Below, one piece after another: positions 1,628-62,437 of a stretch of 64,000 nt of DNA. Source of the DNA: Hemiscyllium ocellatum (taxonomy: Eukaryota). The stretch lies in the NCBI RefSeq assembly GCF_020745735.1, contig NC_083435.1:21017231-21081230 (forward strand), given 5' to 3'. Under the pieces are notes generated by a model that saw nothing but the letters and a program-made list of their open reading frames with translations, made no database searches and was not told where the DNA came from. Position numbers and translations under genes: made by a program. How positions within the stretch are numbered: the first letter of the stretch is position 1; the number at the start of each line of letters is the position of its first letter.

Positions 1628-1654
1628 ATGAAGAAGTGAATGATCTCCAAAAAG
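1628..1654 (+). CDS. Microexon A (27 nt, phase 1-1) of an unnamed coiled-coil gene; (D)EEVNDLQK
   Basis: tatatctttacag|ATGAAGAAGTGAATGATCTCCAAAAAG|gtgaat; conserved in unit 2; frame-compatible with neighbouring exons. Confidence 0.75.
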
Positions 1655-2200
1655 GTGAATAAATTGCTCTTTTTTATGTTCTTCAAAAAATAATTTTCTG
1701 TGGTGAATTGACCACCATTTCTTAGTTTTGTCTGTTGGAGGTTATGTTGCAGATGTACAGGACAGTAGTTAGGCTACTTTTGGAAAACTCCGTGCATTAA
1801 AAAATCAGCAACAGTGTGGAAACAGCGATATTTTTCCATGTTAGAATGGTGAGTGTCTTGGAGCAGAACTTTCAGGTGGTGGTGTTCCAGTGTATCTGGT
1901 CTATTTGTCCTGTGAATGGAAGTTATCGGAAATTAGGTACTTGGGTGAATTTCTGCGTCTACCTGATATATAGTTTACACTGCCATACCTGAACGTTGAT
2001 GATAAAAGGATTACATGCAGGAAAATGTTGTGCCAAGCAACTAGGATGCTTTATATTTGTTGCTGTCAAGCTTCTTGAGATATTTTGGAACTCTACCCGT
2101 CCAGAAAAATCGGAAGCATTCCAATGCACTGACAACCTGTGCCTTCGAGTTGATGCTGGCGTTTTGGGAAGATTGTGTTGCATGAATATCGAACAGACAA

Positions 2201-3672
2201 CATAGAACAATACAGCGCCGAACAGGACATTCGGCCTTCGATGTTGCGCCAACCTGTGAACTCATCTAACTTCATCCACCAATACTATCCCATCATCATT
2301 CATGTGCTTATCAAAGGATTGTTTAAATCTCATTAATGTGGCTGAGTTAACTGAATTGCCAGGCAGGGCATTTCACGGCCTTGCCCTCTCTGAGTAAAGA
2401 ACCTGCCTCTGACAGCTGTCTTAAATTTCTCACGCTTCAATTTGTAGTCATGCCCCCTTGTACAAGCTGACGTCATCATGCTTGGAAAAAGACTTTCACT
2501 GCCCATCCTATCTCATCCTCTGATCATCTTGTATGCCTCTGTCAAATCCCCTTTTAGACTTCTTCTTTCCAATGATAACCCCGACCCAAGTCTCTCAGAA
2601 TTTCTTCAGACAACGCAACTCCCTGGCAAATCTCCTCTGCACCGTTTCCAGTGCTTACCCATTCTTCCTGTAATGGGGCGATCAGAAATGTACACGATAT
2701 TACAAGTGCAGCCACACTAGTCTTTTTGTACAGTCGTAGCATGACATTATGGCTCCAGAACTCAATCCCGCTACCAACAAAACCAAACACACTGTATCTC
2801 TTCTTAGCAGCACTATCAACCTGGGTGGCAATTTGCAATGATCTATGCCTCTGCATACCCACACTACTAAGACCCTTTCCATTGACCCAGTATTCTGCCT
2901 TCCTGTTATTGTTCCCAAAGTGAACCACCTCACATATACGCATTGAATTCCATTTGCCACCACTCAGACCAATTCTGCAAATTATCCAAGTCCGCCTAAA
3001 ATCTACAACATTCTTCCACACTGTCCACTAGTCCACCGACTTTAGTGTCATCTGCAAACTTAAAAACCCATCCACCAAAGCCTGCATTTAAGTCATGTGT
3101 AAAAATGACAAACAGCAGTGGTCTCAAAACAGATCACTGTGGCACACCACTAGAAACTGGACTCCAGGCTTAATATTTTACATCAACCACCACTCACTGC
3201 CTTCTTAGAGAAAGCCAGTTTCTAATCCAAACTCCTAAATCACCCTTAATCCAATATGTCTGCATTTTCTCCAACAGCATACCATGTGGAAGCTTATCAA
3301 AGGCTTACGAAAGTCCATGCACGCATATGTTAACTGCCTTACCCTCATCCATATGCTTGCTCACCTTCTCAAAAATCTCAGTGAGGTTTATGAGACATGA
3401 CCTGTCCTTGACGAATCCATGTGGAATATCTGCAATCAAATTGTTGCTTGCAAGATGGTTATAAATCCTATCTCTCTTAATCCTCTCCAATACCTTTCCT
3501 ACAACAGATGTAAGGACGACAGGTCTACAATTACCTGGGTAATTTCTACTGCCTTTCTTGGACAAGGGCAGAATATTTACAATCTCCACTCCTCTGGTAC
3601 TAAACTTGTAGACAATGACGACTCAAAGATCAAAGCCAAAGTGTCCATAACCTCTTCCCTAGCTTCGCAGTG
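2201..3672 (-). mobile_element. 5'-truncated CR1 LINE (RT region to 3' UTR), degenerate
   Basis: Minus-strand ORFs give CR1 ORF2 motifs (PGNCRPVVLTSVVGKVLE, HGFVKDRSCLINL, CEVVHFG, SLQIATQVDSAAKK); 3' tail at ~2201. Confidence 0.93.
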
Positions 3673-6039
3673 AATTTTCGAATACTGCGTAATGGGTTAG
3701 GTATTAAATTCATAGATATTTTGTTCGCAGTCTAGTAGGACACAAAATCAAAAGGTGTGATTGCATTGTATCCCAATTGGAATGCAATATTCTCATTAGA
3801 GTTTCAAGTCACAAATTTTAAAACTGGAGTCTTCGATACTTACACCAATAATGTACTTAGCGTGATATCATATTAGACTCTTATTGATTTGTTTCATTTT
3901 TACTCATTCGATTGCTTTTAATGAAGCCAAGTACGTGAAGACATTAAGCAAACATTGCACACAATGCATTATGTTGGCGTTTCCTCCCGAGTCGACATTC
4001 CTTGACATATCTAGATGCGATAAAAAGATGACTATTAACTCTTCACTATCTTTTGCAAGCAACAAATCTTTAACTTATTTATTGCTCAACGTGGCTCATA
4101 AAGGCAGGACACTTTTAACGTTGGAATTTGGCTCGCAAAACCAGTCATTAAAAGACGTTTTGAAAATCTTTAGACAATATGGAAATTAGATGCTACAATG
4201 CTGTTCAGGATGGTGATCCATCATTTGAATCGTGACATGGAAATTATCAGTAAAAGATTTCAAAGTCAGTCATGTGTTATTAAGTGTAAAATATAAAACA
4301 AGTAGCATTTCCCGCGTGTGTATACTGCTCCTTCCTTCTCAATGATGTGGATCAAAGGTTTTTTAATTTAAAGAGCAATTTTGTTGTACTGTCGATCAAA
4401 TGAGGGAAATATAACTTAAAACAAGAAAATTGTCTGCTGGGCACAAATCTGCACAGAGACAGTCTATTTATTGGCGTTAATATAAAGGTAATCTCGTGTT
4501 GGAATTTCACAAACTATTTAGTGATTATTTCATGGGCTCGTCTCTCCGGTCTTGTATGTGAACAATATCGTCGAAACATCTATCCTATAACTAAGACCAA
4601 CTGTCTTTCTGTCATTTTCTGTGTATGTGGTTAAATGATATATTTTCTATATTGCTTACTCTGTGTAATGTACTTCTGCAACTTCCATGTTACAAATGAA
4701 ATGGAAAGACTTTCAAAGAATGTAAAAGTTTGAATTCTCAATCAGTGAAGAAACGACGCGTGGAACTGCAAATTCTTGGCATCAGCAATAGAATAGACAG
4801 AAACAAAATAAAATATCTCATTGAAGTTTAATGTTCAAACTTCTGCTGTCGAAATCTTCTCACTTTATTTATTCGTTTTTCTTTAGGCCACTCATAATAT
4901 TTGTGCATTTTCCGTCTTTGTATATTTGAAAATGTGAGATTATCAATCGGGGAAAAAATAATTGACGCTACATTTGGAAAGGTGCATGAATGGGAAAGGT
5001 TCAAAGTGATAAGGATCAAATGCAGGCATATGGGGCTAGCTTAGTTTAGGGGATTTATTCAGTGTTATCAGTTTGGAACAAAGTGTCTACTTTGTGCTGT
5101 ATGACTCTATGACTCTTATTTCAAATCTGTGCTGCCCTGTTCCATTTACAGGAAAATTCCTATTTCGTGAACTCAGATTATGGCAGAACGTAGACATCTT
5201 TAATTTCTTATCTGTAACTGTTTGAGTTGGTAGATAAAAATGCACTTACTGACTTAGAAACTTCATTAGTCAGACAACAAATGGAATGTTAAAATAATTA
5301 ATTAAGGAGAGACGTAGTTGCAATGGAAGCATTTCAGACGAATTTAACTAAAATTATTCTAGAGATTAGTGTTTGTCTACTAAGACAGATTGAGCAAGTT
5401 GGACCCACACTACTTGAATGTCTAAGAATGAGGTATGATCCAAAGGTAGCATGTAAGATACTATACAGGATTGGCAAACCCGAAATTGAGAGATTGTTTA
5501 CTATTACGGGACTATCTAAAATGTCAGCTCATTTTTTAAGGTAAGAGACAACAGATTCAAAATAAAGGAAATGAATTCGTTTTATCAAATCTGTTGCAAT
5601 TCATTGTCCCAGAATAAAATAGCGGTGGGGCACTCCGCATGTGGAGGTAGGTAAATATTAATCAATAACAGTTTGAAGATTTGTGGAAAGAGGGAAGGAA
5701 ACTGGTGTCAGACTGAGGCGAAATGAAACGTGTTTATATTTTAAATGGTGAAGCATGTCTGACGGGCTGACTTACCTACTCCTGATCCCAGTTCTTTCGT
5801 TCTCATCTTATGATGTCAGAGAGAATTGTTCAATTTCGTCGTTTAAACAATTTTCTCACATATGCGATGATTCATAGAATATTTCAAACTCATTTGAAGA
5901 GTACTATACACAGTGAGTCTTAAACAAGAAGTATCTTTTTTGCAGGGCCTCCCATGAGGGTGCAGGAAATTATCTATTTGTAAGGGATTGGGTGGTAACG
6001 AAATATACAGGGAGAATTCAAGCGTGAGTGTCCCAGAAA

Positions 6040-6360
6040 AAATAACATGGAACTGTACAAAGCAGAAACAGGGCCCCCTCAAGCCCTCCAAAGCTCCGTT
6101 GACACATTTTGCTCTTCCAGGCCAACAAAATGTCTTCAATAAACTTTCAATATCCCTCTGTTCCCTTCATGTTCATTATTTCACCAGGTCTTTCATGAAT
6201 GCTGCTATTGTGTATGCTTCTATAACCTCCTCTGGTAGCCCGTTCCAGGCATTCATTACCATTTATTTGAAAAACCTGTGTCGCACATCTCTTTTTAACT
6301 TCCTCTCATTCCTTTATTGCATCTTGAACCTGAAATTGACTCATCCACACTGGAAGATTC
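6040..6360 (-). mobile_element. CR1 3' fragment (left part lost in unit 2)
   Basis: Unit-2 ORF 38601-38873 reads FFKQIVMNAWNRLPEEVKEA, the CR1 ORF2 C-terminal motif. Confidence 0.7.
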
Positions 6361-6756
6361 AGTTTGATGTTATGCAGTGTCTAATTATAATCCAGGTAAT
6401 TTTGTGGCTCAAGCACCAAAGTGGCAGTTTATGGAGGATATGCTGCAAACATTTCTGTACGAATGTTCTCTTTTTATTAGAATATTTTCTTTTAAATTAA
6501 TTATACTTAGTTAACGTAAGGATATAGAATAAATATCTGATAATATTGAGTGTGTGCTGTGTGTTCATCTCTTGAACTTACACTCGCCTTTTGAATGTCT
6601 ATCGCTAACATTGTCATAAAAAGGAATCTAAAATAACATTCAAACACGTCAGGTGTATGAAATTCATGATCATCCTTCTGAAATCAGCAAAACAATTTTC
6701 CTTTAATTTTGCAAAGCATTTTCATACTTTTCTTACTTCAATCTACATTTGAACAG

Positions 6757-6783
6757 AAAAAAGTCTTCAGGAAAAGAATGATG
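6757..6783 (+). CDS. Microexon B (27 nt, phase 1-1); (E)KSLQEKND
   Basis: Long pyrimidine tract, then tttgaacag|AAAAAAGTCTTCAGGAAAAGAATGATG|gtaatt; resembles exons E and G. Confidence 0.75.
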
Positions 6784-7345
6784 GTAATTTTTTTAAGCAT
6801 TTTGTCACTTTGCACATTTCAGGACAGTCGAATAATGCAACTGCAAGGGGAGCACAATATTTGATAATGCACGAGAGGAGCGAGTTTCTTGGTGAACAGC
6901 TAAGCACTGACTGATAGAGACGTTGAAATAGCGAGTGCAGAAGTCAGATGAGTATTGAAGTGTAAGTGCTCAATTTTGTTAAATTTTAAAACGGGCAGTT
7001 TGACTTTGATATATCATGCCCCTGAACACTCTTAATGAAGCAGCAGCATGTCCAATGTGTATTCCTGTTTTTCACTTTTCAAAATCAAGGCACTTAGTCA
7101 TAATTTATTTAGCCTCTGGTGTATTTGAGTGTCATAAAGTGATTGCAACTCACATTCTTAACATTATTGTCACTGGCATTCATACGCTACTCAATCTTAA
7201 TCGTTAAATATTAACCAATTTAAAATAATGATTTGTCTTGAATTTCGATTAACACTGTTGAAATTGTAAATAATTAAGTGCGTTTAATATTCGTTGTAAT
7301 GGAAGAATTCCACATAATGTGAGTATTTTACAGTCAACATCAGAA

Positions 7346-7640
7346 TAGAGAGCATAGGTTTAGGTTGAGAGGGTAACATTTTGAAATGGACCTGAGGGAC
7401 AAATTTTGCAAGGAAAATGTGGTATGTGTTGTGTGTATGGCATGAGCAGCCAGACGAAGTGTTGGAGGCTGATGCAATTACAACATTTAAAAGACATCTG
7501 GATAGATATATGAATAGGACAGGTTTAGAGGGATGTAGTCAAAGTGCTGGAAAATTTACTAGATTAGATAAGGATATTTGGTTCACATGGACTATTTGGA
7601 CTAAGGAGTCTGTTTCAGTGCTTCCAATCTATATGACTGC
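7346..7640 (+). mobile_element. CR1 3' fragment, unit 1 only
   Basis: VWHEQPDEVLEADAITTFKRHLDRYM, the CR1 ORF2 C-terminus. Confidence 0.8.
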
Positions 7641-7684
7641 GTGGTTCTAAGTCAAACATGGAAGCATGGAAAATGGAATTCTAC

Positions 7685-7958
7685 AGAGGTAAAAACAATG
7701 ACTGCAGATGCTGGAAAACAGATTCTGGATCAGTGGTGCTGGAAGAGCACAGCAGTTTAGGCAGCATCCAAAGTGCAGCAAAATCGATGTTTCAGGCAAA
7801 AGCCCTACATCAGGAATAAAGAGAGTGAGCCTGAAGGGTGGAGAGATAAGATAGAGGAGGCTGGGGGTGGGGAGAAAGTAGCATAGAATACAATGGGTGA
7901 GTGGGAGAGGGGATGGATGCTGCCTGAACTGCTGTGCTCTTCCTGCACCACTGAACCA
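7685..7958 (-). mobile_element. Penelope pseudo-LTR fragment with inverted terminal arm
   Basis: Reverse complement of the pLTR at ~47200-47450; 45-nt inverted arms (7725-7769 / 7915-7959); 16-nt direct repeats gaaaatggaat(t/g)ctac. Confidence 0.88.
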
Positions 7959-8469
7959 GAAAATGGAATGCTACTCCAACGTGACGTGGTAATTGAGCTA
8001 CACGTCCATGTCCAACGTGACAACGCTACACGTTCAGAACCAATATATTTGCAGGGTAATACTTTTCTTCATGTTCTGTGTGAGTGGGCTCGAGGGCAGG
8101 AGACTGGAAACCAGTGCAAAGAGAGAAGAATGAATGTGAAAGATAGAAATGTACAAAGAAAACGAGCAAGGTAAGTTGTAGTAGTGCTAGCACGTTTTAA
8201 AACATATGAAAATAAGCATCTGTAAAAATGATTTATCTCAACTGCATGCAAATATTAATGGTCTAATTAAATAAGATTGCTAAGTTCATAGCATACGTAG
8301 TTGTAAACAGATACGATAACTCTGTGACTATGGCTCCGAATGCCGTGTGATATAGCGTGATAACTAAGCACTCAAAGGTATTCAATATTTAGGAAAGTCT
8401 GACAAAGAGGAAAATGAGAAAAATGCTTTTGCTAGTGAAAATACAAATCATTGTATACACAAACAGAGG

Positions 8470-8610
8470 TCAGAACTGAGGAAGAGTTATCGGACCAGAA
8501 AAGTAACATTGATTTCTCTATACAGATGCTGCCAGATCTACTGTGCTTCTCCAGCAATGTCTTTTTAATATTTCGGATTTACAGCATCTACATTTGTTTC
8601 GGTTCTTAAA
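8470..8610 (+). mobile_element. Decayed pLTR/SINE-like repeat with eroded hammerhead core (also at ~40865-41000)
   Basis: ctgaggaagagttatcggaccagaaaag...cagatgctgccagatctactgtgcttctccagca resembles the pLTR tail seen elsewhere in the window. Confidence 0.5.
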
Positions 8611-10802
8611 AATTATGTGTAGGAGGTTAATGCATAAAAACTAGTTGTCAAGATATTCTGGGTAGGACTAAGAAGTAACAACGGGTAGAAAACATTAGAA
8701 TTTGTCTACACGCCTTCAAACTGTACTGTTACAGAAGGGTGTTAAGCTGAATGGGAAATTAGACATCCATGGAGGAAGAGTGTTTCAGGATTTGTAAGTT
8801 TTAATGTATGTATTAACTGACAAAACCATGTTTGCAGTCATATTCATTCGGGAGAATTATTGCATCTGTAAAATATGCTTTGTTTTTCAAGTAGAAACCA
8901 ACTGGAGAAGAAGCTATCTTAACGTTGGTTCTTATCCATAAAGTGTTTACTTTATAATGTTTTAAATGGTCCTGCATCGAAACAAAAATTCAACTTAATA
9001 CTAAAGAATTGTTAATTGTGATTAAATGGGAATTGAACAGAACAAAAACCAATGTCCTAAGTTTAATCAATGGAAACAAGACATTTATGAGGTGTGAGTT
9101 GTCTGTCAGAGATTTTGTCATTTCTGTACAGGGATGAGGGTAAATAAGCAATGGTTAATATATATTTCAGGTAGTGGGAAGCATCATTACGAGAGGGAGG
9201 ACCTCTTTGATGAAACTTTCCACTTGTTTTGCAGCAGGCACAGCTGGAGGCTGTGGGCTGATATGCTATCACGTAAACTGGAAGGACAGATTTCATTTTC
9301 TAATGACTGATTTATTTTTCCCCAAAAGTGAAGGCAATCTATTTTAACTATTTAAATTGATGAATTCTCCTACACTTACGAAGCCAATATAATGTATCCT
9401 TAATACGTGGAATGAAATAATCAATAGAAGACCTGTCGGTCGTAACACATCCAATTTGCTTTTGGTTTGAAAAACATGTTTAAGAACCGACAAAATGCCA
9501 GTGTGCAAAGAAGAGCAGCGTCAAAATTTGCCACAATCACAACTGCTTTGCATGAGATATAATTGCCTTGGCTACTTCTTGGAAATAAACGCATGGAAGG
9601 TAAAGACTTTGCAAATAATCTCGTTTCTATATTGTTTGATAGCATCTGTTTTCAGTCAGTTTCAGGCAATGGAAATCGTTCAGATAAATTTAGTAAAGTA
9701 TCATGTTCCCACTGCTGATTTTTTTTAATCAAAATATTTCGACTTATTTATTCATGTTGCTAAACTTATTACAAATCTAATTAGCTGCACTGCAGTAATT
9801 CAAATAAAAGCAACAAATACATTTGCCAGTGGAGTGGTATTGCCATCTCTTGATCAGAAGTTCAAAAAATAGGATAACCCAGAAGGATTACACTGGTGGT
9901 TATCAATTACCAAAACGCGTTTGTTTTTTCTGATTTGACTCACACTTTTATTTCTTCCATGCAAGTGCTACCGCGCACACACGCCATGACCACCTTTGCC
10001 TCTCAATGCACGCCAATCCATTATAACTAGCATTGAAGTTTTAAAGGTATTATGCTGAATCGTGTGCAAGCAAGAATTTTCATACATTACTTCCCTGTCC
10101 TTAATGAGCTTATATTTGGGTAATTGCACAGCGTGAAGTCCAGTAGATAAAAGGAAAACAACTGGAAGAACGTAAGCAATAGATAACATTGGAAACACAG
10201 ATATTTTGAAACAATTTAATCGGCTAATCTGGCAGGCATCCTATGTGGGGGAGAAAAAGATTACTCAACTTGCAAAGATGTTTAGTCGACTTAATGAAAA
10301 TTCATATATGAAGAATAGCAAGAAGTGTTGATGCCACAGTAGAAAAAAGAATCGGCCAGAGAAAAATACGTTACAGTCATTTGTCTCCATTAAATAACGT
10401 TTGGTATTACATTTTTACAGCAGCCTGTAATGAATCAAATTAGGAGCTTTGTGCCCGAGTACGATGCCAGTCTGTTATGTTTTGTTTCCATGCAATGACA
10501 AATTGTCAGCTATCATGTTCCCGCACTGCAGTTACCACGTGGAAACAAAATTAAAAATTCAACCTGTAGAATTAATTTCTGATTGGATATAAAGCTGGTC
10601 ATAAATATTGACAAACTTTTACATGAAAATGGAACATTTGTTTTGAATATATGTCAAGTTGTGTTAACGGATAAATAGTTCATCATTTAAAACAAAAACA
10701 TTGCAAATTGAATTTTCATTCAACAATCTAATTTTTCATTATGAACGAATACAGAAATAATAGTTGTTATTTTCTGACCTCATACATTTATTTTTATTTC
10801 AG

Positions 10803-10826
10803 TGGAAACAATTATGCAATTGAGAG
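10803..10826 (+). CDS. Microexon C (24 nt, phase 1-1); (V)ETIMQLR
   Basis: Branch-point-like ttctgac, then ttttatttcag|TGGAAACAATTATGCAATTGAGAG|gtgagt (consensus donor); identical in unit 2. Confidence 0.85.
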
Positions 10827-11139
10827 GTGAGTACTTGCGAAATAGCTCATGCTGTGTGGACGTTAATCACGTTGAGTAATATCATCCACATACTGATTAG
10901 AAATGAAAATTAAAAATCAATCATTTATAAACAAACGTGTTAGCATTGTTATTTAGTATGGTCTAGCAATTATGTTCACTAGCACGTTGATGGTGGGGGT
11001 CGTAATGGCTGCTTTATGAATAATTTCATTCAGTCAAACATTTTTGATGACAACGTATCAAATGGTCCAAGTAATTTAAATCAATCGCTCACTGAAACAT
11101 TAATTGTAATTTTAATTTTTCAATGTTTTCGAAATTGTA

Positions 11140-11232
11140 AAAAAGTCACACAACACCAGGTTATAATCCAACAGGTTTAATTCGAAGCACTAGTTTTCGG
11201 AACGCTGCTCCTTCATCAGGTGGCTGTGGAGT
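11140..11232 (-). mobile_element. Short pLTR-like fragment of a second family with a hammerhead-like motif
   Basis: Minus strand: cac-CTGATGA-aggagc-agc-gttcc-GAAA-acta-gtg; partly deleted in unit 2 (~43560-43610). Confidence 0.6.
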
Positions 11233-12079
11233 ATGCTAGTGTTAAAATGTTAATGCTAATATTGAAAATGTTAATATTCAAAACCATATGGCATTGCTGA
11301 TTGAAGTATGTTCTATCTCGCAAACTAATACGTTGATGTGACACGAATGCCTGTGAGCTGTACATCCCGATATTCACTGGGTTATAATTAAAATGGAAGG
11401 TGACAAAAACAAATCAAGTCGATCAATTCTTCGACACAATACTAATTCAGATGATTCCAAATCGTTGATTGGAAAAAATAGAATGCATTACGAATCTAAG
11501 AAGCAGGCATGAATGATTTTTGTCAAGGCGCTTGACAGAGTAATATACGGATGCAAGTTACATTTATTTTTTACAATTCTGTAATAGTACTGAGGTAGAG
11601 AAGAAAACGAAAGCTGTTTATTGCGGGATCTCTGCAATTTCACTTACTGTAGAGCTGTATTTTCAGAATCGTAATGTTTATATAGAAGATTCAATTACAG
11701 AAAAGAATGGTCCAAACAATTGGAGATGAGCAAAATCATTAAGCTGATGACAGTTGACTTTCAATCAACTTACAGAATAGTCATAAGGTCAATAGTCTCG
11801 GATTCTAAAAATCTTAATAGTTGTGGACATTGACACAATGTCAGATGACGAAGTTTGAAAGAGGTTTTAAAAGATCCGGACTTAAATTTTAGTCTTGCAG
11901 GAGACCCTTATGTATTCGAATTATCACGAAACAAAAAAAAACATATTTTCATGCAGAAACATCGACTTAGGTCCACCTCCAACAAGCGCCAATTTAAACT
12001 TCAACTGTTGACATTCACTGATACAGCAGGCATTACATCGCCCACCATCAGCATAGTAGTGGACGTCATTGCTCAACCA

Positions 12080-12545: not shown

Positions 12546-12639
12546 TCTTTAAAATTTGGCCTCAAGCAGAACTGCATTCGCTATATAGATAAGGATGTTA
12601 GGTCAGACGCTAGGGATTCATTGTTGAGTAAGTCGCCTG

Positions 12640-17335: not shown

Positions 17336-17339
<4 letters not shown>

Positions 17340-50891: not shown

Positions 50892-50927
50892 ATTCCTGAT
50901 GAAGGGTTTTTGTCCGAAACGACGTTT
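50892..50927 (+). ncRNA. Degenerate hammerhead motif in Penelope 3' pLTR (unit 2)
   Basis: CTGATGA..GAAA present but GAAACGTC is changed to GAAACGAC, so the cleavage triplet is lost. Confidence 0.55.
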
Positions 50928-53340
50928 TCGCTGCACTTTGACTGCTGCCTGAACTGCTGTACTCTTCCAGCACCACTGATCCAATACAATCTACAGTCTT
51001 GTGTTTAAATTCATTAATATTTGTTTATTAGTTACAATTATAATACAACAATATCTCACCTATAATATGTAACGGCAGTTATTTTAAACCCTTTGAGAAT
51101 TGTGTGATCGGACGATCCCTTCTACTGTTGACGAAATATCTGGTTTCCACCTACCCAATACCTAATTGCTATAAGCGTCATTACCTTATCTAGTTGCCAT
51201 TACTATGAAGACTGGCATTCTGACTGTAGAAACTGATGTCTCAACTAACAATTCGTCTCAACAATGAACAGGTAGCAGCACAAGTCATGACCATTTTAAT
51301 GCTTTTGAATGATTCTCCTTCAAACAATTATGGCGTGATTCCTTGATTAGACATTTTTTTTAATATCGGCCTTGAGCTTCAGCAAATTTTCTTCTTTATT
51401 TCTGTGTATTTCTGTCAACTAAAGAAGTTTTTAAATGTTTTTTTTTATCCAGGATATGGTTGAGAACTGACCATCTGAAGAATTCTAAAACCGTGGAGGG
51501 CACGGTTAGGCTAAATAGACAAGTGTTTTTCCTTGGGGCGGGAAAGTTCAGAACTAGCGGGCATAGGTTTATGGTGAGACACGAAAACCTTTATAAGGGA
51601 CCTAAGAAGCAACATTTGGTCGTGTATGCAACAGGTTGGGAAAGGAGGCGGTGGAGGCTGGTACAATTACAGTATTCAAAGTGTATTTGGAAGGTCACAG
51701 GAAGAGTTCAGAGGGGTATGAGTCAAATGCTAGCAGATGGAACTAATTTAATATAACTGGTCAGCATAGATAGGTAGTGCCGAAGGGTCTGTTGCTGTGC
51801 TATACATCTGTATGACTTGACGAGTTCACAAACACATTTTTCCGCGTTGTTCCTCATGACAGTCCTGGCGATGTCAATGTTCAAGCCCAATCATCAGGGT
51901 TCAAAAATTGGCGTACAGTTAGCATTATTTGATGCAACGATGTGCAAATTGAGTTAGTTGTTAAACAGCTTCTAGATTAACTGTCAAATTGTGATCTTGC
52001 AATATCTTTCGTCCAGATTTGGTAACATCATCATGCAAAGGGCAATGAGTCGATGAAATAAGCTGTAAGAGGAAATCGTGGAGGCCGGTGCAATTTTAAC
52101 ATTTAAAGGGCATCTGACTGGCTATATGAACATAAAGAGTTGAGATGGATATGGGTGAAATGATATCAAATGGGACTAGATTAATTTATGGTGTCTGGTC
52201 AGCATGGACGAGCTGGACCAAAGCCTTTTTCCATGCTGTGCAGTTCTGACTATATAAAGGTGACCCATCAAGCAGATATTAATCGATGAGAATATTCAGA
52301 CTGTTTAATCAGTGACGAATTAAATGTAGAAATATAATTATCTTCATCTATGATGTCTTCCTGTTGCTTGTCTTTATTATTCTGACAGAATAATGTATTA
52401 ATTATATGGAAACTGTACTGTGCACAGTCGAAAGTAGCATAATGTCTCTTGTTCTCATTTTACCCATTTGATATTTGAAACCAAATGGCGCCTATCCTGA
52501 ACTGGAGAGCATGATCAACACTGGCATCGAAATTTCCCAGATTTTACTTTCACCCTTTGAGATGGCAATATGAATGTAACCACGATTAGAACGAATCGTT
52601 CATGTACAAAATCAATAGGAGACGGGAGCCCTAGCTCAGATCTTGGGACTTATGATATTTCTAATAAAATCGACCCGTAAGTGATGCATCGTTTTTGTTT
52701 TCGTTTCTGAAAGGAGGCTACAGGTCGCCCAAGATCCTATCGTGGAAAACAAAGCAATGTCTACGTACAGAAAGATCAAGTGTAGTCTCTGATTACCAGT
52801 AGAACTTCTATTTCTCTTCTTGGTCATTAAGTTGACTCAGTGAAGGTGGTGACATCAAGATGAATCTTGATTATTGATGTGACAGAATTGTTTATCTTCT
52901 GCTGTGACTGTCGTTCCTTTCGGTCACGGGCAAGTGTTCAACAAGTACGAGAATACTTAAAAATGTGTTTCTTCAATCACAAACCTACTGCCTCTGTAGC
53001 ACTTGGGTCTCCAGTTATTTGACAGACTTTGTCTGAATTGTGCATTGTCTGGATCGAAACATTTTATCCTGAAAGCAAGATGTCTGCATGGCAATTAGAC
53101 TGCTCCACCAGGGTAATTGTTTTCCATCGAATGACCTGGTATAGCATTTGTGTTCCAAACCATGTCTCCAAACATTATCATGGGTTCAGATTCATCAGTA
53201 AAGCTGTTCAATTGCACAGCCCAATACTCATCGTCTACTGATTTCAGCAACAGTCATATCTGAATGAATCCTTTGGACAGGAAGTAAACATGCAAGCAAA
53301 ATTGTTATTCCGTATGTAACGAATGAATTTCTCTTCACAG

Positions 53341-53367
53341 AGGAAAGTCTTGAATCAAAGTTGGAAG
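53341..53367 (+). CDS. Microexon E' (unit 2); (E)ESLESKLE
   Basis: tttctcttcacag|AGGAAAGTCTTGAATCAAAGTTGGAAG|gtgaga. Confidence 0.85.
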
Positions 53368-56300
53368 GTGAGATCATTCATTTTTGTGATATGTTCTATG
53401 ATGATCTTTTCTGAATTGCTTAACACATATAAGACGGTGAAAAGGCTGCTAATCATACAACTTGAATCATGCCACATCCAGAGTAAACTATTTGCAGAAT
53501 GGCTCGAAATGAATGATTATGCACCAACACTACTATTCATGTTGATTGGTTTATATCTACTTAATACTGGGTGAAAAATAAAGCAACACTCATTTTTTAC
53601 ACTGTTTGTTACATAGACACATTGTTACATTGTTCATACGTTTATCAGTTGCATTCATACCTACAATATTTTATGAGCGATTGCAATCAATCAAGAGCAT
53701 TTGATGCACGTCTACTAGTTTAAGTGTAATGGAAAATGCTTTGGCTTCAGCCTGCTCCTGTCGAAAAACATTAGATAATGACAATTCAATTGGTAGTCTT
53801 GGCGTTTCTCACAGCTTAAATGTTAGGCAGGTCACCACAGATAGTTCGGCCCATTAACTCAAAAACGTTCTACCAAACGATTGTGTCAACCTGATACTGA
53901 AATTTATAAACCACATTAATGCTACATCGAAGAGATAAGTTCACCCGTTAAGTCATGCAGACTGGTGTGCACTTCTTTCGGTGCTTTATCTCCATATTGT
54001 ACAAATTAAGTATTCCACCTATCGAACACCAGCAGTTATCCATTCAAATGTAATTATAATGATGAATGTTAATGTGGCAGCGCAAAGCCTCATTTGAATA
54101 GCATATTCGAACTCATTCCCAGCTATTTCTGTGGTCGTCATAATTTTTTTAATATATAAGCAAACAGAATTCCCAAATTACATGTCTTCTGAAGTGAAGA
54201 AGCCATAAATTATGGACAACTTTTCTTTACTTAACAAGAGTAGTTACTTATTACAAATAAATGAATCTTCAAGCAACAGATGTGCATTTCTGAACAATTA
54301 ATAAATTACTCGATTCATTCAAACTCTAACCTCTGATTGAAATATCCTTACAGAAATGCTGAGCATACAAGTATAGAGAGGACAAAAAACAAACAGAGTT
54401 ATAGGCAGAGGTTATGGGTAGATTTATGGATAAACACTGAAAAGTAGCTCAATATTTCCTTTTCCCAAAGTTTCACTGCAATGGTCAATTTTGATTTTAA
54501 AACTTGGTGCTCTTTCATTTGTATTTCGCTGATATTTTCAATTGCTATTAGAAACAGCAATACGGGTGTTTTACACTGACAAAGATGTTCTTTGCTCGTT
54601 AAGATTCACAGATTACAATAAATGGTGAGGGAAAAATACACAGCCTTTCCTCATTTTATGACATCCTTTACTATTCCAGAGAAATGGCACAGTTCCTGTT
54701 CTTACAAAATCGCATTTCTTTGAACAATTACTTGCGTCCAAATTATCAGCATCCAGAGCGCGACTGATAGAAGTCTTGACCCACACTGACTTTGCCACAG
54801 TCAACAGTCTCCAGATCAATAGTTTCTTGAAGCTGGCCAAATCTCGATTTGCACAGAACCCTTGGCTCCAACTCATCTGAAAACCTACCACTCATTACAT
54901 CTAAAGATTGCAGTGTCAATGCCTCTTACAGCATGTGCTAGTTTATTTACTTTGATTAAATGTATCAATCCTTCAACCGTCAATCATTTCGGAATTTCAC
55001 TCTAAAAGCAAAAATGTAACTAAAATGATGCAATATTTACATATTATAGCCTAACACAAGGAAACTCAGGATAACAGTGCCGTACATGATCAACTGGTTC
55101 TTATGCCTAGTGCAGTTCATTTTATTTTCAATGAATCAAATTTATCGTATGTAAGTATTCCTTTCCATTTGAGCATATTGCTATAAATATGGAAATTCTA
55201 AATATCGATTGTGGAAACAAAACATTTATCTATAGATTCATTCGCACTGTGTGAATGTAAGAGCCATGTACCTTAAATCTTACATTCAGCTGATTGATCA
55301 GTGTAGCATCTGACTGCAATGGAACAGATACAACAACTTATCCACAATAAGCCTCAGTTGCCAAAGGCGGTAGTCATCAGATCTGAGAAAATAACAATAA
55401 CTTCACGGCTGCTGACTCACTACTACAGGACAGATGAGAAGCTAAACTTTGCCATTTGATCTCTATTCTTCCTGTTGCAAGTATGACATCACACAATACT
55501 GAAGCTTTGCAAAAGGAACGGGACAATTAGCTCCATGGTGGTACAATTGGAGCGTTATTCAAAGAGGACACTAGATACCTCAAACGGAACTAAACTGATA
55601 TAAGTGACACGAACCCTTTTGTATGAAGATCAGAGCCATTTCTCTAAACATATTTCTCATGATAGCATAGAACGTGCAAGACAAATCAACATCCAATACT
55701 GATTTTGCACCTGCACATTCAGGTAGATAACAAGAACAGAAGATTCAGACTTAGCAGACTGTTTCTAGTTCATGTTATTGCATGAATAGAATGTGAATTC
55801 GTATTTTCTGCAAGATTAATATTATGGCGATAATATTAGCATAATGCATTTTTTCTCACATCATTATTATGTTCTGAATGCTCTGCATGACATGAAGTAA
55901 AATAATATTAGATACAGAATCTATCAATACGTCAATGTTCTTTTCTGGATTACTTTACTTTAGTGTGGCCTCTTTAACACTCAGATGTCACTCAAAGTTC
56001 AGTGGAAGGTAGATTCTTAATAATACACATGTTATGAACGAATGGTCAACACCCAACTGTCTTGGTACTTGCATACGATATGTGGCTGAAGTGAAACATA
56101 CTTAACTTTTGTCAAACTGTTTACATGAACTTACCCAATCCTATGAATCTACAAATCCAAAAAAGAAAAATCAGCTGATGAATTAGCGCCATTTTCGCAA
56201 TTTCATCTCCCACTCTACTTCATTCTGGAAACAGTCAATCTAATGGAAACATTCGCGTGGATGAATGTCAGGTTTCACTATCCTCATGGCAACTTGTTGT

Positions 56301-57735
56301 GGTCAACTGGTCAATTTCTGTCCTCTTTTATCGCTGTTATACAAACCAAGGTCTGCACAGTGTTCAGTACTGCGGGATTTTTAAAAAATTAAAACGAACA
56401 AGCGAGAAGACAACATTGACCACAAATAAAATTAGCAACTTTATTATTTTGCTGTCATGAGTGGGAGAAATTGCATGATCATGAATACTGCTGAAACTTT
56501 ATAAATTTAGATGCAGGGTCAAGCCGTTTGAAAAATTATACATTTCATTCTTGATCAGGCTCGTTGGCATTACCTAACAGTAGGCAGAAGTGGGTACAGC
56601 AGATGCTGGAGATTAGAGTTAAGATTGGAGTGGTGCAGGAAAGCAACAGCAGGTCAGGCAAGGTCCCAGGAGCAGGAAAAATCACCGTTTTGGGAAAACG
56701 TCATTCACCATTCTATTACCTAATAGTATCAATCCACATGCAGAAATGTGATGGAGATTTGTGCTGACAACATTGGATTTTTAAACCAAAGAAAAAACGA
56801 TCAAATTTTCTACTTGTACAAAAATAGCATGCACAGGTTTTAAGTGAAAAAGTTTTATCTCTGCTTGAGCAAATTTCCAGATAATGAGCGGCTGCCGGCA
56901 TAAACATCAAATTCTGCTACTCTAGAGCTTACCAAGTTATTGATTGGGCTAACTCAGGATAATGGAAACCCATCGATGGTGATGGACACATAAGGCAAAA
57001 CGTTATCTAGGAATAGAATATTGTAGCATCGCAAGTGGTCTCTGATGATGAGTTGTTTGGGGACTGGAATTAGGTGGGTATAATGTCGGTGTTTAACGAT
57101 GACAAGCATAGCGATTTTCTGAGTTGCTGTCCATGGATGGTGAAGTACACAAAACGATGTCAAGCATAGCGATTTTCTGAGCTGCTCTCCATGGACAATG
57201 AAGTACACAAAATTATGGGGATTGATGGTAATGTGGTTTGATAATACTTATAATTATGGGAAACTGGGAATAATTTCTGAAAATCTGAAGCATCCAAATG
57301 CTTATGTAATTCAGCATTGTGACCTCGTGATAGCTGATTTGCCATTTTTAATGTCACTGGAAAAATGCCACCCCAGTGTATGGCATTTGGTCAGACATCC
57401 GAAAATTTGTCATCCTCTTTTGAGGCCCATGACCAAAGCATCACAAGCTAACGAGACTCATCACATTCGATCCCAAAAGGGACTAGGACAAAGCTTTGAA
57501 TTCAACTTGCAATCTATTTGCATTCACCAGGGATAATAATGATTAATGTTAACGAAACTGAAAGAGAAAAGATGTGTATACTTATTCCACTTTTTGCATC
57601 TATTCAAATACTTTTGTGCAAAATTAAAGAATGTGTGAGGAATGAAACAGCAATGTAGGTGTTAGTTCGTTCCTTAATAATGAATAAAAATGAGATAAGA
57701 AAATAATATTCACAAACATCATTTTTCGTTCACAG

Positions 57736-57771
57736 AAATTAAATCATTGAAAGATGCTCTAAACAATGCGG
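57736..57771 (+). CDS. Microexon F' (unit 2); (E)IKSLKDALNNA
   Basis: tttttcgttcacag|AAATTAAATCATTGAAAGATGCTCTAAACAATGCGG|gtgagc. Confidence 0.85.
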
Positions 57772-58944
57772 GTGAGCATGTTCAAAGAATATGATTCGTC
57801 AATGTGTCTTTTAGGGGAGGACAAATCGCGATGATCAATATACTGAGATCCTAGGTTATGGATTTCTTTTGTTGGAATCATTTACCTTGGAAGGTAACAG
57901 CGTTGGCCACAATGTGTTTTGGAAACATATATTGGAAATTAATTCATGGTTCTTACATCGTAAATTTTAACGCAGACCGCTTTAATGCATGCAATCCACA
58001 AGTTTGAAGTAATTTGTCTGCAAATTTACCTGCAGATGAGTAATTATTGCAACACTCGGACATCTGAAATTGGTCAAACATGACTTTCGTCCGGAGGCTC
58101 AATAAATTCTGAAAAGAAACCTTTCAACGTGATGTCTTTGGGCAGAGCATGTTTTTGGTTACTTTAAGAAATTTGCATCATTAAAAAGCCTTCAAAATAT
58201 AGAAAATAGCCACACAAAAAGATGCATTCAGTCCAAGTCGTCCATGCCGAACAGATATCTTCAAATAATCCAGTCCATTTTATTAAAATTTGGAGAATAT
58301 CCCTCTAAACCCTTCCTACTCGTAGACCCATCCAGATGCCTTTAAATGTTGTATCGTACCAGACTCTACAACTTCATCTGGCAGTTCATTCCATGCATTC
58401 AACAACGTCTGTGTGAAAAAAATTGCCTTTTGGACCCTTTTAAATCGTTCCCCTCTCACGTTAACACTATGTTCTCTAATTTTGGACTCCCACACCCCAG
58501 AGAAAAGGCCTGATTTATTTATCCTATCCACGCCCCTCATGACCTTATAAACCGCTATAAGGTGACATTTCAGCCTGTGGTGCTCCAGGGAAAATAGCCC
58601 CAGCCTACTCGGCCTCTCGCAATAGCTCAAACAAACAAACCCTCGCAAAATCATTAGAAATCATTTCTGAAGTCATTCAATAACTTTGTTATATTGAATT
58701 CGCAAAGCACAGTTTACCATGATTCAACAACCAGAAGCATATGAATGTATCAACAGAGAATAAAATAGAACTTCAATTCTTCGGCAATGCTTCACCATTC
58801 AGTGTGACTCAGCTATTGACGAAGAACTAAGATAAATGAATGTGATACATGTTTATTCTTAAAGACCCCCAAAAAAGAAAGAAGGAATTAGTAATGTTGA
58901 ATAATATAGGGTTAGCATATGGACTTAAAGACCAAAAATGGAGA

Positions 58945-59815
58945 TAATAGGAATGCAAATTTGGTTGCTGAGCTGGTCGATTTGTTCTCAGACGTTTCAT
59001 CATCATGCTAGGTAACATCGTAAGCGAGCCTCTGGTGAAGGTGGAGTTTGAGAGTGTGGTGCTGAAAAAGCACTGCAGGTCAGGCAGCATCCGAGGAGCA
59101 GGAGAACCTACGTTTCGGGCAAAAGTCTTTATCAGGAAAGGGTCAGTAAAGGGTTGGTTTTCTGCCCTGCTTACTATTTAACTGTCGCAGATCACATAAA
59201 TGTGATCCAAATCTATATGCTTGTTACTGAAGTCCTGGTTTGAATGCCAGTCCTTTAGGAATTCCCGTATTTGTCTTTGTTTAGCCTGTCCCAGGATAGA
59301 TGTATTGTGTCAGTCCAACTGGTGTCCCTCTTCCTCTGTGTATATGGATACCAGTGATAGCTGGTCATGCCTTTTGATGGCGAGTTTGCGCTCCTGTATC
59401 TTAATGGCTAGTTTCCTGCCAGTTAATGTACCGTCATGTTTATTGCAGTCCTCACAAGTTATTTTGTATGTCATTCGTTCTGCTGGTTTTTGGTACAGTG
59501 TCCTTTAAATTCATGAGGAGCTGTTCCAGTGTCATGTTATGCTTGTGGGCTATGATGACACCTAGGTGCCAGAATTGTCTAATTGTCATCTCCAAAATGT
59601 CTTTGATGAATGGCATGCTGGCTAGAGTCTCTGGCCATGTTATGTATTCTTGTTTAGGCCTGTTGAGCAGGAATTGGTGGACTGTGAACACCGCATACCC
59701 GTTGTTCCTGAATACGTTGCATGGTTGTTGTTTTTTCTCCTTAAGAACACATTGTTTCTGCTTAGCGAACGAATTTACAACCTGATCACGTTCTGAGCAA
59801 CAATTCTTCTCCAAA
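58945..59815 (-). mobile_element. Old Penelope-like fragment, unit-2 copy
   Basis: ORF 59452-59814 is homologous to 30309-30787. Confidence 0.8.
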
Positions 59816-62191
59816 ATCCAGGCTTGTGTTAAAGTTACGTAAGGTGTAAAGTCTCCAATTTCAATAATGTATTAGTACAAATATCTTGAAAAATCAAAAT
59901 CTGTCATAGCTGCAAATGTAAATAAATTGGATAAGACAGATCAAGTTCTTTCGTTGACATATTTGAGAGGTTACGAATGCTGTTTTTGTAAGTAAAGGAC
60001 AATTGTCGAGTTTTCAAACTAAATTTATCGAGAACAGCTTATTTATCTGCTTTAATTTGGAAATCTAAACTGAATACATCAAAATTACGAATCATGAACA
60101 CTTTCTTCTTGGTTTTAGAGGGAAGACAACCGATGTTAAAGAATTCTCCCTAACTACAATATAACTCACTCACACGAAATCCCAGCTTTTTCTTGCAGCT
60201 TGGAGGCCGCTGTGAGGGAGACATGAACAGTATGGAGTGTTGCAGACCACATTTGCAAAAATGATTATAATTTTTTCATTCATTGGCGTTATAAGACTAT
60301 CAAGTAGTTATTGGAAGTTGATGAATATTCTTCAACATCCGTTTCTGCCCGTGGAAAGAAGAGCAAAATCGCAATGTTGTGGCCGTTGAAGCTCTTGGCA
60401 ACAAAATAGAGAAGAGACCATTACATTGCATGTTGATGCCTGAACGTATCTTTTTGCAAGTTTGTATGGGGAGACTGGAGGTTTTTTAATGACAAATTGG
60501 TCGGGTGTAGAGCTCTAAAATATTCAGGGTTGCATTAATGCAACCTAGACATGAGGATTTTTTTTTAAATGAACAATGTGGACGTTGAGAAAATAAGATC
60601 AGGATTTTTTTATAACAACACCGCTCAGAAAGCAATCGTCTGTTGAGATATTGGCAACTTCTCCAAAACTCACATCTTAGTGGTAGCTCAATAAGGTCTT
60701 ACAAATTTTATGCGAATATCAAGCTTGATAACTTTTTCTTTGACAGGCCAATTTCAAAACAACGGCTAGCCCAACACTACAACAACTTCATTTAATGCAA
60801 CAAGGTTTGACGAAATACATCATTGAGCTGTTTGGACTGTGGCCCGAAATGTTTAATGTCAAACAATTTTATGCCATTCATAAAATGTTTCATGCATCAT
60901 GACATTAGTTACTGTATGATAGGAGATCAAAAATAAGTACCTCCCAACTTTTATGATTGTCAGAGGATTTAGAGATTGTTCTTCTAACCACTTCAGACAT
61001 GCGTTTGAATTCCACAGTATGGGATACGAAATTTGGTTTCAATAATAATTGAATTTGGAGACATCTTATCTAAGGATGAGTATAACAGTGATGGTGTAGA
61101 CACCCAAATGATTCACAAAGGATTTTCTTCATGAAGGAAATCTGCTTCCTTCATCCAGACAATATGGAACAGCAATGCACTTCAGAATAAACTGAACTCC
61201 AAATTAGCCTCGACTTCCAACCAATTAAATAGCAATTAGAGATTGACAACAAGTAATCATGATGCCAGTCATACTCACAGGTTCGAGGAGATTATCAAAA
61301 ATGTTTGAAATCTACTTGATAGCGACTATTCAGTTCACCAGTGATCGCCATGCCCTACTAAACAGCCGATACTATAAGATTGACATTCAGTACATGACAA
61401 GCACAGGTTGTGGGATGCTTTATTAATCCATGTCTCCAAATATCCTGCCAATATCTTGAGTGGGGGCATTGCACATTTATGACAGTTTGAGGGAATTGTG
61501 ACTATCTTATTTGCAGTTTTGAAGAATGAGTGATCGTTTTATTGAAGTTTTGCAAAGTACTTAAAGGATCACATAAGGTAAACGTAAGTAAGATATTTTC
61601 TTTAGAAATCAGAATCATGGGTACATTTTTAAAAACTGCGATGGCATTTAGTTCTAAGATGATTACTTTTTTAAACTCAAATAGTTGTGATTCAAAATAC
61701 TGTGGAAGCTCCGTCTTTTCGTATGTTTAAGTCAGAGACTTATGGCAGTCTGGTTACCAATGACATTCAGAATTTTGTGGACTTGTTGGAAGAAAGGATT
61801 TCAGTATCGATCAGGTATGTTAATATTTAAAGGAGAAGCAGGTTCAATGCACCTACTACTGTTCCAATGCTATTGTGTTCAATGTTTTTTCAAAATATAA
61901 AAACCCTTAGTGTTTAATATTCTCACTACATGTTAAAAATCCTGAATATCCCCAGAGAATAATAATATTGCACGTAATAAGTCACAGAACAAAATGTCTC
62001 CAAACTAATTTTGTTCGAGATAACATTTGGCAATTGAACTAAATGGAGGCATCAGGTCAGCTGAAATTATTTTATGTAAGAAACTGTATCCGAGTCCTTA
62101 GATAAAATATTCTTGGACAATAACTGAGATATGTATATAATCGAAATATAAACAATAAATCGAAGCATACTTTCACATTGTTTTGCACCAG

Positions 62192-62218
62192 AAGAAACTT
62201 TACAACAGAAAGAATCGG
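62192..62218 (+). CDS. Microexon G' (unit 2); (E)ETLQQKES
   Basis: ttttgcaccag|AAGAAACTTTACAACAGAAAGAATCGG|gtaagc. Confidence 0.85.
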
Positions 62219-62410
62219 GTAAGCATATTAAACAAATGCATCGAGCATTTATCTGTCATGAGAATTCCACAAGTTTGATTTTCTTTCAACTGTCCTACCA
62301 ATTACTGTGACACACAATGAAATTCTGTTTGACGTCATGCCATTAGTAGTTAAAGTGGAGACGCAGTTCATATGTATCTCATAGATATTCATGGATTATT
62401 ATACTTTCAG

Positions 62411-62437
62411 AGTTCAACGAAAAGTGTAAAGCTAATG
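62411..62437 (+). CDS. Microexon H' (unit 2); (E)FNEKCKAN
   Basis: attatactttcag|AGTTCAACGAAAAGTGTAAAGCTAATG|gtaaat. Confidence 0.72.

What the first reader, a model, noticed from the sequence alone, without database searches (positions are those of the whole stretch)
1628..62437. Hidden gene built from symmetric phase-1 microexons encoding a coiled coil
Seen: sixteen 24-36 nt segments, eight per unit, each with a pyrimidine tract + CAG, a G|GT(A/G)A donor, and a length divisible by 3. Spliced in order they give a stop-free 74-aa module, DEEVNDLQKEKSLQEKNDVETIMQLRDLKAIMEGLEESLESKLEEIKSLKDALNNAEETLQQKESELNEKCKTN. Positions 25,28,32,35,39,42,46,49,53,56,60,63,67 read L,L,M,L,L,K,I,L,L,A,L,K,L, a 3-4 heptad pattern that runs across five splice junctions; chance splice-like sites would be unlikely to give this. 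Coding density is only 222 nt per ~30 kb, so ORF finders miss it. Known: arrays of tiny symmetric exons build the heptad cytoplasmic tails of chicken BG and butyrophilin-family proteins and much of TSBP1/C6orf10 and triadin. Inference: this is the interior of an unannotated or poorly annotated shark gene of similar design. Its family cannot be named without the terminal exons.
Basis: partly seen in the sequence, partly recalled or inferred. Interest (0 to 1): 0.92.

Follow-up and report, generated by a model that had tools for sequence, protein, structure and literature searches.

The report
Microexon-built coiled-coil gene interior
The window holds the middle of a probable shark gene in which tiny 24-36-base exons, eight per roughly 30-kb tandem genomic unit, splice into a repeated 74-residue coiled-coil module; the design is known from chicken BG genes, but the gene's family and its expression remain unproven.

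Summary
All sixteen segments sit at the stated places on the + strand. Each has a CAG acceptor, a G|GT(A/G)A donor and a length of 24, 27 or 36 nt, and all are phase 1-1. Each set of eight splices to a stop-free 74-aa peptide. The window is a tandem array of 34.5-kb and 28.8-kb units about 93% identical, and a third unit starts near 63590.

The exons are not chance. Exons plus splice dinucleotides differ at 6 sites between units, against 19.3 expected from intron (P = 0.002). The hydrophobicity spectrum peaks at period 3.50 (P = 0.0005).

No homologue, transcript or terminal exon could be obtained.

Most likely this is the interior of a real gene for a long, acidic, modular coiled-coil rod that grew by unequal crossing-over. 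BG/butyrophilin/TSBP1-type membership is a lead, not shown.

The parts
279..34801 (+). Genomic tandem unit 1 (34.5 kb), carrying microexons A-H
   Evidence: Self-BLAST: collinear blocks 279-34800 match 34802-63587 at 91-95% identity. Over 25,139 aligned nt there are 6.5% substitutions and 0.64% gap events.
34802..63589 (+). Genomic tandem unit 2 (28.8 kb), carrying microexons A'-H'
   Evidence: It is shorter than unit 1 mainly because unit 1 has extra sequence at about 4100-6172 and 14306-20324, the latter including a LINE piece.
63590..64000 (+). Start of a third tandem unit, cut off by the window end
   Evidence: 1-678 matches 63312-64000 at 91% identity. The SINE-like repeat recurs at 63670-63805.
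1628..1654 (+). Microexon A, 27 nt, phase 1-1, peptide (D)EEVNDLQK
   Evidence: Acceptor ctttacag, donor G|GTGAAT. One difference from unit 2 (K9T).
6757..6783 (+). Microexon B, 27 nt, peptide (E)KSLQEKND
   Evidence: Acceptor tttgaacag, donor G|GTAATT. It has a weak pyrimidine tract, so the strict scan missed it, but the relaxed scan found it.
10803..10826 (+). Microexon C, 24 nt, peptide (V)ETIMQLR
   Evidence: Acceptor ttatttcag, donor G|GTGAGT. Identical in both units.
13658..13684 (+). Microexon D, 27 nt, peptide (D)LKAIMEGL
   Evidence: Acceptor tctcctcag, donor G|GTAAAG. One synonymous difference.
24264..24290 (+). Microexon E, 27 nt, peptide (E)ESLESKLE
   Evidence: Acceptor cccttcacag, donor G|GTGAGA. 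It lies in a 92-nt perfect inter-unit match.
28670..28705 (+). Microexon F, 36 nt, peptide (E)IKSLKDALNNA
   Evidence: Acceptor tcgttcacag, donor G|GTGAGC. It lies in an 82-nt perfect inter-unit match.
33386..33412 (+). Microexon G, 27 nt, peptide (E)ETLQQKES
   Evidence: Acceptor tttgcaccag, donor G|GTAAGC. One synonymous difference.
33601..33627 (+). Microexon H, 27 nt, peptide (E)LNEKCKTN, only 188 nt downstream of G
   Evidence: Acceptor atattttcag, donor G|GTAAAT. Two differences from unit 2 (L67F, T73A).
36152..36178 (+). Microexon A' (unit 2)
39182..39208 (+). Microexon B' (unit 2)
43221..43244 (+). Microexon C' (unit 2)
45652..45678 (+). Microexon D' (unit 2)
53341..53367 (+). Microexon E' (unit 2)
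57736..57771 (+). Microexon F' (unit 2)
62192..62218 (+). Microexon G' (unit 2)
62411..62437 (+). Microexon H' (unit 2)

Best explanation
The window is the interior of one protein-coding gene on the + strand. Its genomic body here is a tandem array of roughly 29-35-kb units: two complete units and the start of a third. Each unit carries eight symmetric phase-1 microexons (27, 27, 24, 27, 27, 36, 27, 27 nt). Every exon ends in G, and that G is the first base of the next codon, so A through H splice in frame and H splices in frame into A of the next unit. Each unit therefore adds one 74-residue module. The module is acidic (21 D/E against 11 K/R), has no proline and no aromatic residue, and shows a 3.5-residue hydrophobic period. 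That is an alpha-helical coiled-coil segment about 11 nm long (inference, from 0.15 nm rise per residue). Because 74 = 10 x 7 + 4, the hydrophobic seam shifts by four residues (a stutter) at each unit boundary. Residues 11-21 have polar residues at core positions. The array most likely grew by unequal crossing-over between the 30-kb units after the eight-exon module had already diverged internally. Because all exons share one phase, whole units or single exons can be gained, lost or skipped without a frameshift. The protein would be a rod or stalk of adjustable length. Shown: exon anatomy, tandem units, slower change in exons than in introns, coiled-coil periodicity. Inferred: transcription, splicing in genomic order, dimer or oligomer formation. 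Gene family and cellular role remain unknown.
For: Anatomy. All 16 exons have a CAG acceptor, a G|GT(A/G)A donor, a length divisible by 3 and phase 1-1.
Strand asymmetry. The strict scan gives 16 candidates on + (14 true) against 3 on -. When conservation in both units is also required, + gives 8 true candidates plus 3 others and - gives 5. Two of the three extras, and one of the two extras in the strict scan, lie in a SINE-like repeat; the third extra is a shorter variant of exon D with an internal acceptor.
Reading frame.
Constraint since the duplication. Exons plus splice dinucleotides show 6 differences against 19.3 +/- 5.8 for 20,000 random intronic sets, P = 0.002. No exon has an indel, although the background has 0.64% gap events. 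All 32 splice dinucleotides are intact.
Placement of replacements.
Coiled-coil signal. The hydrophobicity power spectrum of the 148 aa peaks at period 3.50, P = 0.0005 against shuffles. The a/d score has P = 0.001 against residue shuffles.
Splicing enhancers. Exons are 68% purine against 50% for the window, which fits the GAA-type exonic enhancers that microexons need (established knowledge).
Against: There is no transcript evidence and no homologue.
The exon differences are 4 replacement to 2 silent. That is not the signature of strong protein-level purifying selection, although the numbers are tiny.
Several splice sites score only moderately on a crude consensus matrix; the acceptors of B, E and H score near or below 0.5 bits.
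Long runs of consecutive microexons separated by 3-10-kb introns are demanding for exon definition.
Some intronic stretches are as well conserved between units as the exons, with perfect runs up to 138 nt.
The heptad score is reached by 11-18% of exon-order permutations.
Confidence: 0.72

Rival explanations
1. The array is the cytoplasmic tail or stalk of a BG/butyrophilin/TSBP1-type gene. That would be an Ig-superfamily type I membrane protein, or a tail-only derivative of one, whose intracellular coiled coil is built from phase-1 microexons. This is a more specific form of the best explanation.
For: The design matches chicken BG tails: symmetric small exons encoding a predicted alpha-helical coiled coil. 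BG tails use 21-nt, sometimes 24-nt, exons, 13-36 per gene (PMC4046983). Butyrophilins with heptad repeats after the TM domain occur in cartilaginous fishes (PMC12841164). Unchecked first-reader notes on this genome place butyrophilin-like and TRIM genes on the same sequence piece, 10-12.5 Mb upstream; one of them describes an array of 27-nt microexons in front of a B30.2 exon. Another note places class I genes 5.5 Mb downstream.
Against: No Ig-V, TM or B30.2 exon lies within 64 kb. Exons are 27 nt, so one exon is not one heptad. The eight-exon higher-order repeat with a 30-kb period is unlike the compact BG arrays. No sequence homology was tested. The neighbouring genes are megabases away and are known only from unchecked notes.
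Confidence: 0.25
2. The array is an amplified exon block inside a large cytoskeletal, golgin-like or other soluble coiled-coil protein. It would be comparable to segmental exon-block repeats inside other giant structural genes and unrelated to immune-type receptors.
For: The composition (E/K/L/Q-rich, acidic, no proline) and the 3.5-residue periodicity are generic for long rod proteins. The 30-kb units carry eight non-paralogous exons, which suggests an old multi-exon segment that was later duplicated as a block. From my own knowledge, not tested here: the human nebulin triplicate region repeats a block of eight exons, which shows that block amplification occurs inside structural genes.
Against: No homology evidence of any kind. 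Long rod proteins usually encode their coils in larger exons. Uniform 27-nt phase-1 exons are more typical of the BG/TSBP1 design.
Confidence: 0.35
3. The array is a dead or never-expressed remnant. It would be a segmentally duplicated piece of a former gene, or a pseudogene, whose exons still look intact because the duplication is recent or because gene conversion keeps patches alike.
For: No expression evidence. The replacement-to-silent ratio is 4:2. Non-exonic perfect runs of up to 138 nt show that local homogeneity also exists outside exons.
Against: The empirical test already samples that heterogeneity and still gives P = 0.002 for the exons. All 32 splice dinucleotides and both 222-nt frames are intact at 6.5% background divergence, with no indels.
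Confidence: 0.18
4. The segments are chance splice-like sites in AT-rich DNA that were duplicated along with the unit.
For: With loose criteria and any length, both strands give similar numbers of conserved AG...GT open segments: 39 on + and 46 on -.
Against: Under the specific criteria, + gives 14 true hits plus 2 others and - gives 3. All eight exons share phase, a terminal G, size and purine richness, and the spliced product has coiled-coil composition with a 3.5-residue period. The exons are conserved above background.
Confidence: 0.01

Closest known systems
Chicken BG genes (butyrophilin family): cytoplasmic tails made of 21-nt exons
   Same: Exon number varies between genes through expansion and contraction (PMC4046983).
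   Different: BG exons are 21 nt, sometimes 24, so one exon is one heptad, and a gene has 13-36 of them. Here the exons are 27, 24 or 36 nt, separated by introns of 2.5-10.6 kb (one of 188 nt), and organised as an eight-exon unit repeated every 29-35 kb. No Ig-V or TM exon is seen in the window.
Butyrophilin / BTN-like genes: heptad-repeat exons between TM and B30.2
   Same: A variable number of heptad motifs lies downstream of the TM domain. The family is present in cartilaginous fishes (PMC12841164).
   Different: BTNs have only a few heptads. Here there are at least 148 residues and no B30.2 exon in 64 kb. Homology was not tested.
TSBP1 (C6orf10) and triadin: genes largely made of microexons
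   Same: Many consecutive tiny in-frame exons spread over a large genomic span and encoding charged, helical, low-complexity protein.
   Different: I know of no report of a 30-kb higher-order tandem unit in those genes.
Segmental exon-block repeats inside giant structural genes, for example the human nebulin triplicate region (my own knowledge, not verified here)
   Same: A block of eight exons is duplicated in tandem within a gene at high identity and adds whole protein modules in frame.
   Different: Nebulin exons are about 100 nt and encode actin-binding modules, not coiled coil. Its units are about 10 kb and about 99% identical, against 29-35 kb and about 93% here.

Membership tests
Protein-coding gene interior (generic) | Canonical splice sites flanking segments that join into an open frame | tested here: met
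Protein-coding gene interior (generic) | Exons evolve more slowly than flanking introns | tested here: met
   6 differences against 19.3 expected between paralogous units, P = 0.002. This compares units within one genome, not species.
Protein-coding gene interior (generic) | Spliced transcript exists | not testable with these tools
   No shark transcript collection was reachable. The protein search limited to 41-130 aa found nothing.
Alpha-helical coiled coil | Heptad (3.5-residue) hydrophobic periodicity, with few helix breakers | tested here: met
   The spectrum peaks at period 3.50, P = 0.0005. The a/d score has P = 0.001 against residue shuffles. The module has 0 Pro and 1 Gly in 74 residues.
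Alpha-helical coiled coil | Predicted or measured coiled-coil structure (Marcoil/DeepCoil, AlphaFold, CD) | not tested
It was therefore not sent to structure prediction either.
BG / butyrophilin family | Extracellular Ig-V(-like) exon and TM exon in the same gene | tested here: inconclusive
   No ORF or conserved candidate exon in the 64 kb matches one. The whole window is repeat-unit interior, so terminal exons would lie outside it.
BG / butyrophilin family | Tail exons of 21 nt (sometimes 24), one heptad each | tested here: not met
   Exons are 27, 27, 24, 27, 27, 36, 27, 27 nt, against 21 or 24 nt in BG (PMC4046983).
BG / butyrophilin family | Symmetric phase-1 small exons encoding a coiled coil | tested here: met
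BG / butyrophilin family | B30.2 (PRY-SPRY) exon downstream (butyrophilins proper) | tested here: inconclusive
   None in the window. Sequence outside the window was not available.
BG / butyrophilin / TSBP1 | Sequence homology of the tail to family members | not testable with these tools
   The spliced peptide could not be submitted to the search without a length limit.

The most novel reading that the evidence does not exclude
The gene is a giant, possibly megabase-scale locus whose body is a macrosatellite of about 30-kb units. Each unit would contribute one 74-residue coiled-coil module, so rod length would be set by unit copy number and could vary between individuals. The similar microexon array that another first-stage reader noted 0.93 Mb upstream (s1-147073, unchecked) would then belong to the same gene or to a local family of such genes.
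Probability: 0.1. Interest if true: 0.7.

Novelty: new variant of a known kind. Interest (0 to 1): 0.42.

Why it matters
If the gene is expressed, it shows that the microexon-built coiled-coil design best known from chicken BG tails also exists in a cartilaginous fish, in a different form. Here the exons are 27 nt, multi-kilobase introns separate them, and eight exons form a 30-kb higher-order repeat.

It would be a stringent natural test of microexon recognition across long introns, because many such exons must be spliced in a row.

It would also give a clear example of protein length evolving by unequal crossing-over of very large genomic units.

On the practical side, it marks a class of coding sequence, about 0.7% coding density, that ORF-based and many homology-based annotators miss in large shark genomes.

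The finding is a prediction from sequence alone, and the gene's family and function remain open.

Tried and rejected
1. Protein homology. The search for homologous proteins with the 74-aa module found nothing, but its length rule limited candidates to 41-130 aa, so full-length proteins were never examined.

It also said not to send the peptide out by another tool. After that I did not send it to Pfam, PDB, structure prediction or the atlas. All later peptide analysis was done locally from window.fa.

3. Paralogy among the eight exons. The +/-150-nt regions around each exon show no similarity above random pairs. The G-H pair scores high only because the two regions overlap physically. The module is therefore old and only the 30-kb unit duplication is recent.

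4. Extra exons. Candidates at 410/422-454 and 31877-31897 lie in a SINE-like repeat found four times in the window. The candidate at 21047-21079 meets the strict motif criteria only in unit 1, was not among the candidates conserved in both units, and is not coil-like. The longest perfectly conserved intronic islands contain no convincing coding segment. A scan up to 300 nt in any phase found only transposon ORFs.

5. Domain exons. Pfam scans of 18 ORFs gave only weak LINE endonuclease and reverse-transcriptase matches, and no Ig, B30.2 or other host domain.

6. Rfam gave no match.

7. Literature searches for 27-nt exon arrays, for microexon coiled coils in sharks, and for TSBP1 exon structure found nothing specific.

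8. The search of earlier findings by sequence and by near place returned nothing. A request for positions outside the window was rejected.
Full report
**1. What is in the sequence**

Reading the flanks gives sixteen segments.
- Unit 1: A 1628-1654, B 6757-6783, C 10803-10826, D 13658-13684, E 24264-24290, F 28670-28705, G 33386-33412, H 33601-33627.
- Unit 2: 36152-36178, 39182-39208, 43221-43244, 45652-45678, 53341-53367, 57736-57771, 62192-62218, 62411-62437.

Each segment follows a CAG and ends in G before GTGA or GTAA. Lengths are 27, 27, 24, 27, 27, 36, 27, 27, which sum to 222 nt. All are phase 1-1: the terminal G of each exon is the first base of the next codon. H therefore also joins in frame to A of the next unit.

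Introns are 2.5-10.6 kb, except G-H at 188 nt.

**2. The genomic frame is a tandem macro-repeat**

Self-comparison shows that 279-34800 is collinear with 34802-63587 at 91-95% identity, and that 1-678 matches 63312-64000. The window therefore holds two complete units of 34.5 kb and 28.8 kb and the start of a third.

Over 25,139 aligned bases the units differ by 6.5% substitutions and 0.64% gap events.

The size difference comes from unit-specific insertions. The introns hold decayed retroelements:
- an endonuclease piece at 14861-15280 on the + strand;
- a reverse-transcriptase piece at 3344-3619 on the - strand;
- a SINE-like repeat present four times.

**3. Is it more than chance?**

- *Strand control.* The criteria were CAG with a pyrimidine tract, G|GT(A/G)A, 21-36 nt, length divisible by 3, and stop-free in phase 1. 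The - strand gives 3.
- *Conservation control.* Requiring homologous candidates in both units, with relaxed splice scores, gives the 8 exons plus 3 others on + and 5 on -. Two of the three extras, and one strict-scan extra, lie in the SINE-like repeat. The third extra is an internal-acceptor variant of exon D.
- *Very loose criteria.* With any length and any phase the strands are equal, 39 against 46. The signal is therefore specific to this set and is not a general strand bias.
Only 1.8% of random 222-nt concatenations from the window are stop-free.
- *Constraint.* Exons plus their splice dinucleotides (254 nt) differ at 6 positions between units. In 20,000 random sets of same-sized intronic windows from the same alignment the mean is 19.3 +/- 5.8, and only 0.22% reach 6 or fewer. 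A simpler comparison with +/-400-nt flanks gives 2.7% against 5.9%, P = 0.02-0.04. No exon has an indel and all 32 splice dinucleotides are intact.

**4. Caveats on that evidence**

- The six exon differences are four replacements and two silent changes, so strong protein-level purifying selection is not demonstrated.
That placement fits a coiled coil.
- Part of the constraint may act on splicing enhancers, since the exons are 68% purine against 50% for the window.
- On a crude consensus matrix several sites are only moderate.
- Some intronic stretches are as well conserved as the exons, with perfect runs up to 138 nt. None looks coding.

**5. Is the product a coiled coil?**

The module has 16 E, 11 L, 10 K, no proline, one glycine, no aromatic residue, and a net charge of about -10.

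The hydrophobicity power spectrum of the two modules peaks at period 3.50. Only 0.05% of residue shuffles reach that power in the 3.4-3.7 band. A 42-residue a/d score beats residue shuffles at P = 0.001.

However, 11% of linear and 18% of circular exon-order permutations score as well. The heptad spacing is mainly a property of each exon.

Residues 11-21 have polar residues at core positions. Because 74 = 70 + 4, the seam shifts by four residues at each unit boundary. These last points are my reading of the sequence.

**6. History**

The regions around the eight exons show no similarity to one another beyond random pairs. The eight-exon module is therefore old. The 30-kb unit was copied later as a block, most simply by unequal crossing-over.

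**7. What could not be done**

The permitted protein search found nothing, but it covered only proteins of 41-130 aa. I followed that instruction, so there is no homology search against long proteins, no domain scan and no structure prediction of the module.

No shark transcript data or annotation is reachable with these tools. The window has no Ig-V, TM, B30.2 or other host-domain exon and no Rfam match.

**8. Comparison with known systems**

Chicken BG genes encode a long cytoplasmic coiled-coil tail from 13-36 exons of 21 nt, sometimes 24 (PMC4046983). Butyrophilins with a variable number of heptads after the TM domain occur in cartilaginous fishes (PMC12841164).

The present array shares the design of symmetric small exons encoding a coiled coil. 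It does not meet the 21-nt exon criterion of BG tails, and it differs in its multi-kilobase introns and its eight-exon, 30-kb higher-order repeat.

Unchecked first-reader notes on this genome report several features on the same sequence piece:
- a similar array 0.93 Mb upstream;
- butyrophilin-like and TRIM genes 10-12.5 Mb upstream, one with 27-nt microexons before a B30.2 exon;
- class I genes 5.5 Mb downstream.

These are leads only.

**9. Verdict**

The most likely reading (about 0.72) is the interior of a real gene encoding a modular, acidic coiled-coil rod that grew by duplication of 30-kb units.

BG/BTN/TSBP1-type membership (about 0.25) and an unrelated rod protein (about 0.35) are both open within that reading. 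A dead remnant (about 0.18) is not excluded.

Interest is moderate. The design is a new variant of a known kind, rests on sequence alone, and can be tested directly with RNA-seq and the flanking sequence.

Noticed in passing
window 348-483, 31864-31983, 34871-35006, 63670-63805 (+): A SINE-like interspersed repeat occurs four times in the same orientation. It produces false microexon candidates at 410/422-454 and 31877-31897. From memory it resembles a common elasmobranch SINE, but I did not verify that.
   Followed up: partly
window 14306-20324 (unit 1 only); 14861-15280 (+): A roughly 6-kb G+C-richer insertion is present in unit 1 and largely absent from unit 2. It contains a weak LINE endonuclease match (Exo_endo_phos_2, E = 1e-5). 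It is either an insertion in unit 1 made after the unit duplication or a deletion in unit 2.
   Followed up: partly
window 46893-49619 (unit 2 only), extending to about 52000: This stretch is specific to unit 2 and lies within a wider G+C-rich zone with strongly negative GC skew (up to 54% G+C, skew -0.48). Its ORFs of 100-220 aa have no Pfam match. Its nature is unknown.
   Followed up: partly
window 3344-3619 (-): A reverse-transcriptase fragment (RVT_1, E = 8e-5, below the gathering score) lies antisense to the gene in intron A-B. It is conserved in both units.
   Followed up: partly
window 24381-24518, 8733-8852, 22638-22757, 10053-10171: These are perfect inter-unit matches of 119-138 nt. 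That is more such runs than a uniform 6.5% divergence predicts (about 0.4 runs of 120 nt or more expected, four of 119 nt or more seen). None looks coding. They could be gene-conversion patches or intronic regulatory elements, and one lies 90 nt downstream of exon E.
   Followed up: partly
window 28030-28147 and 57095-57212: A 58-nt tandem duplication (2 copies, 90% match) sits at the homologous place in both units, about 520 nt upstream of exon F.
   Followed up: no
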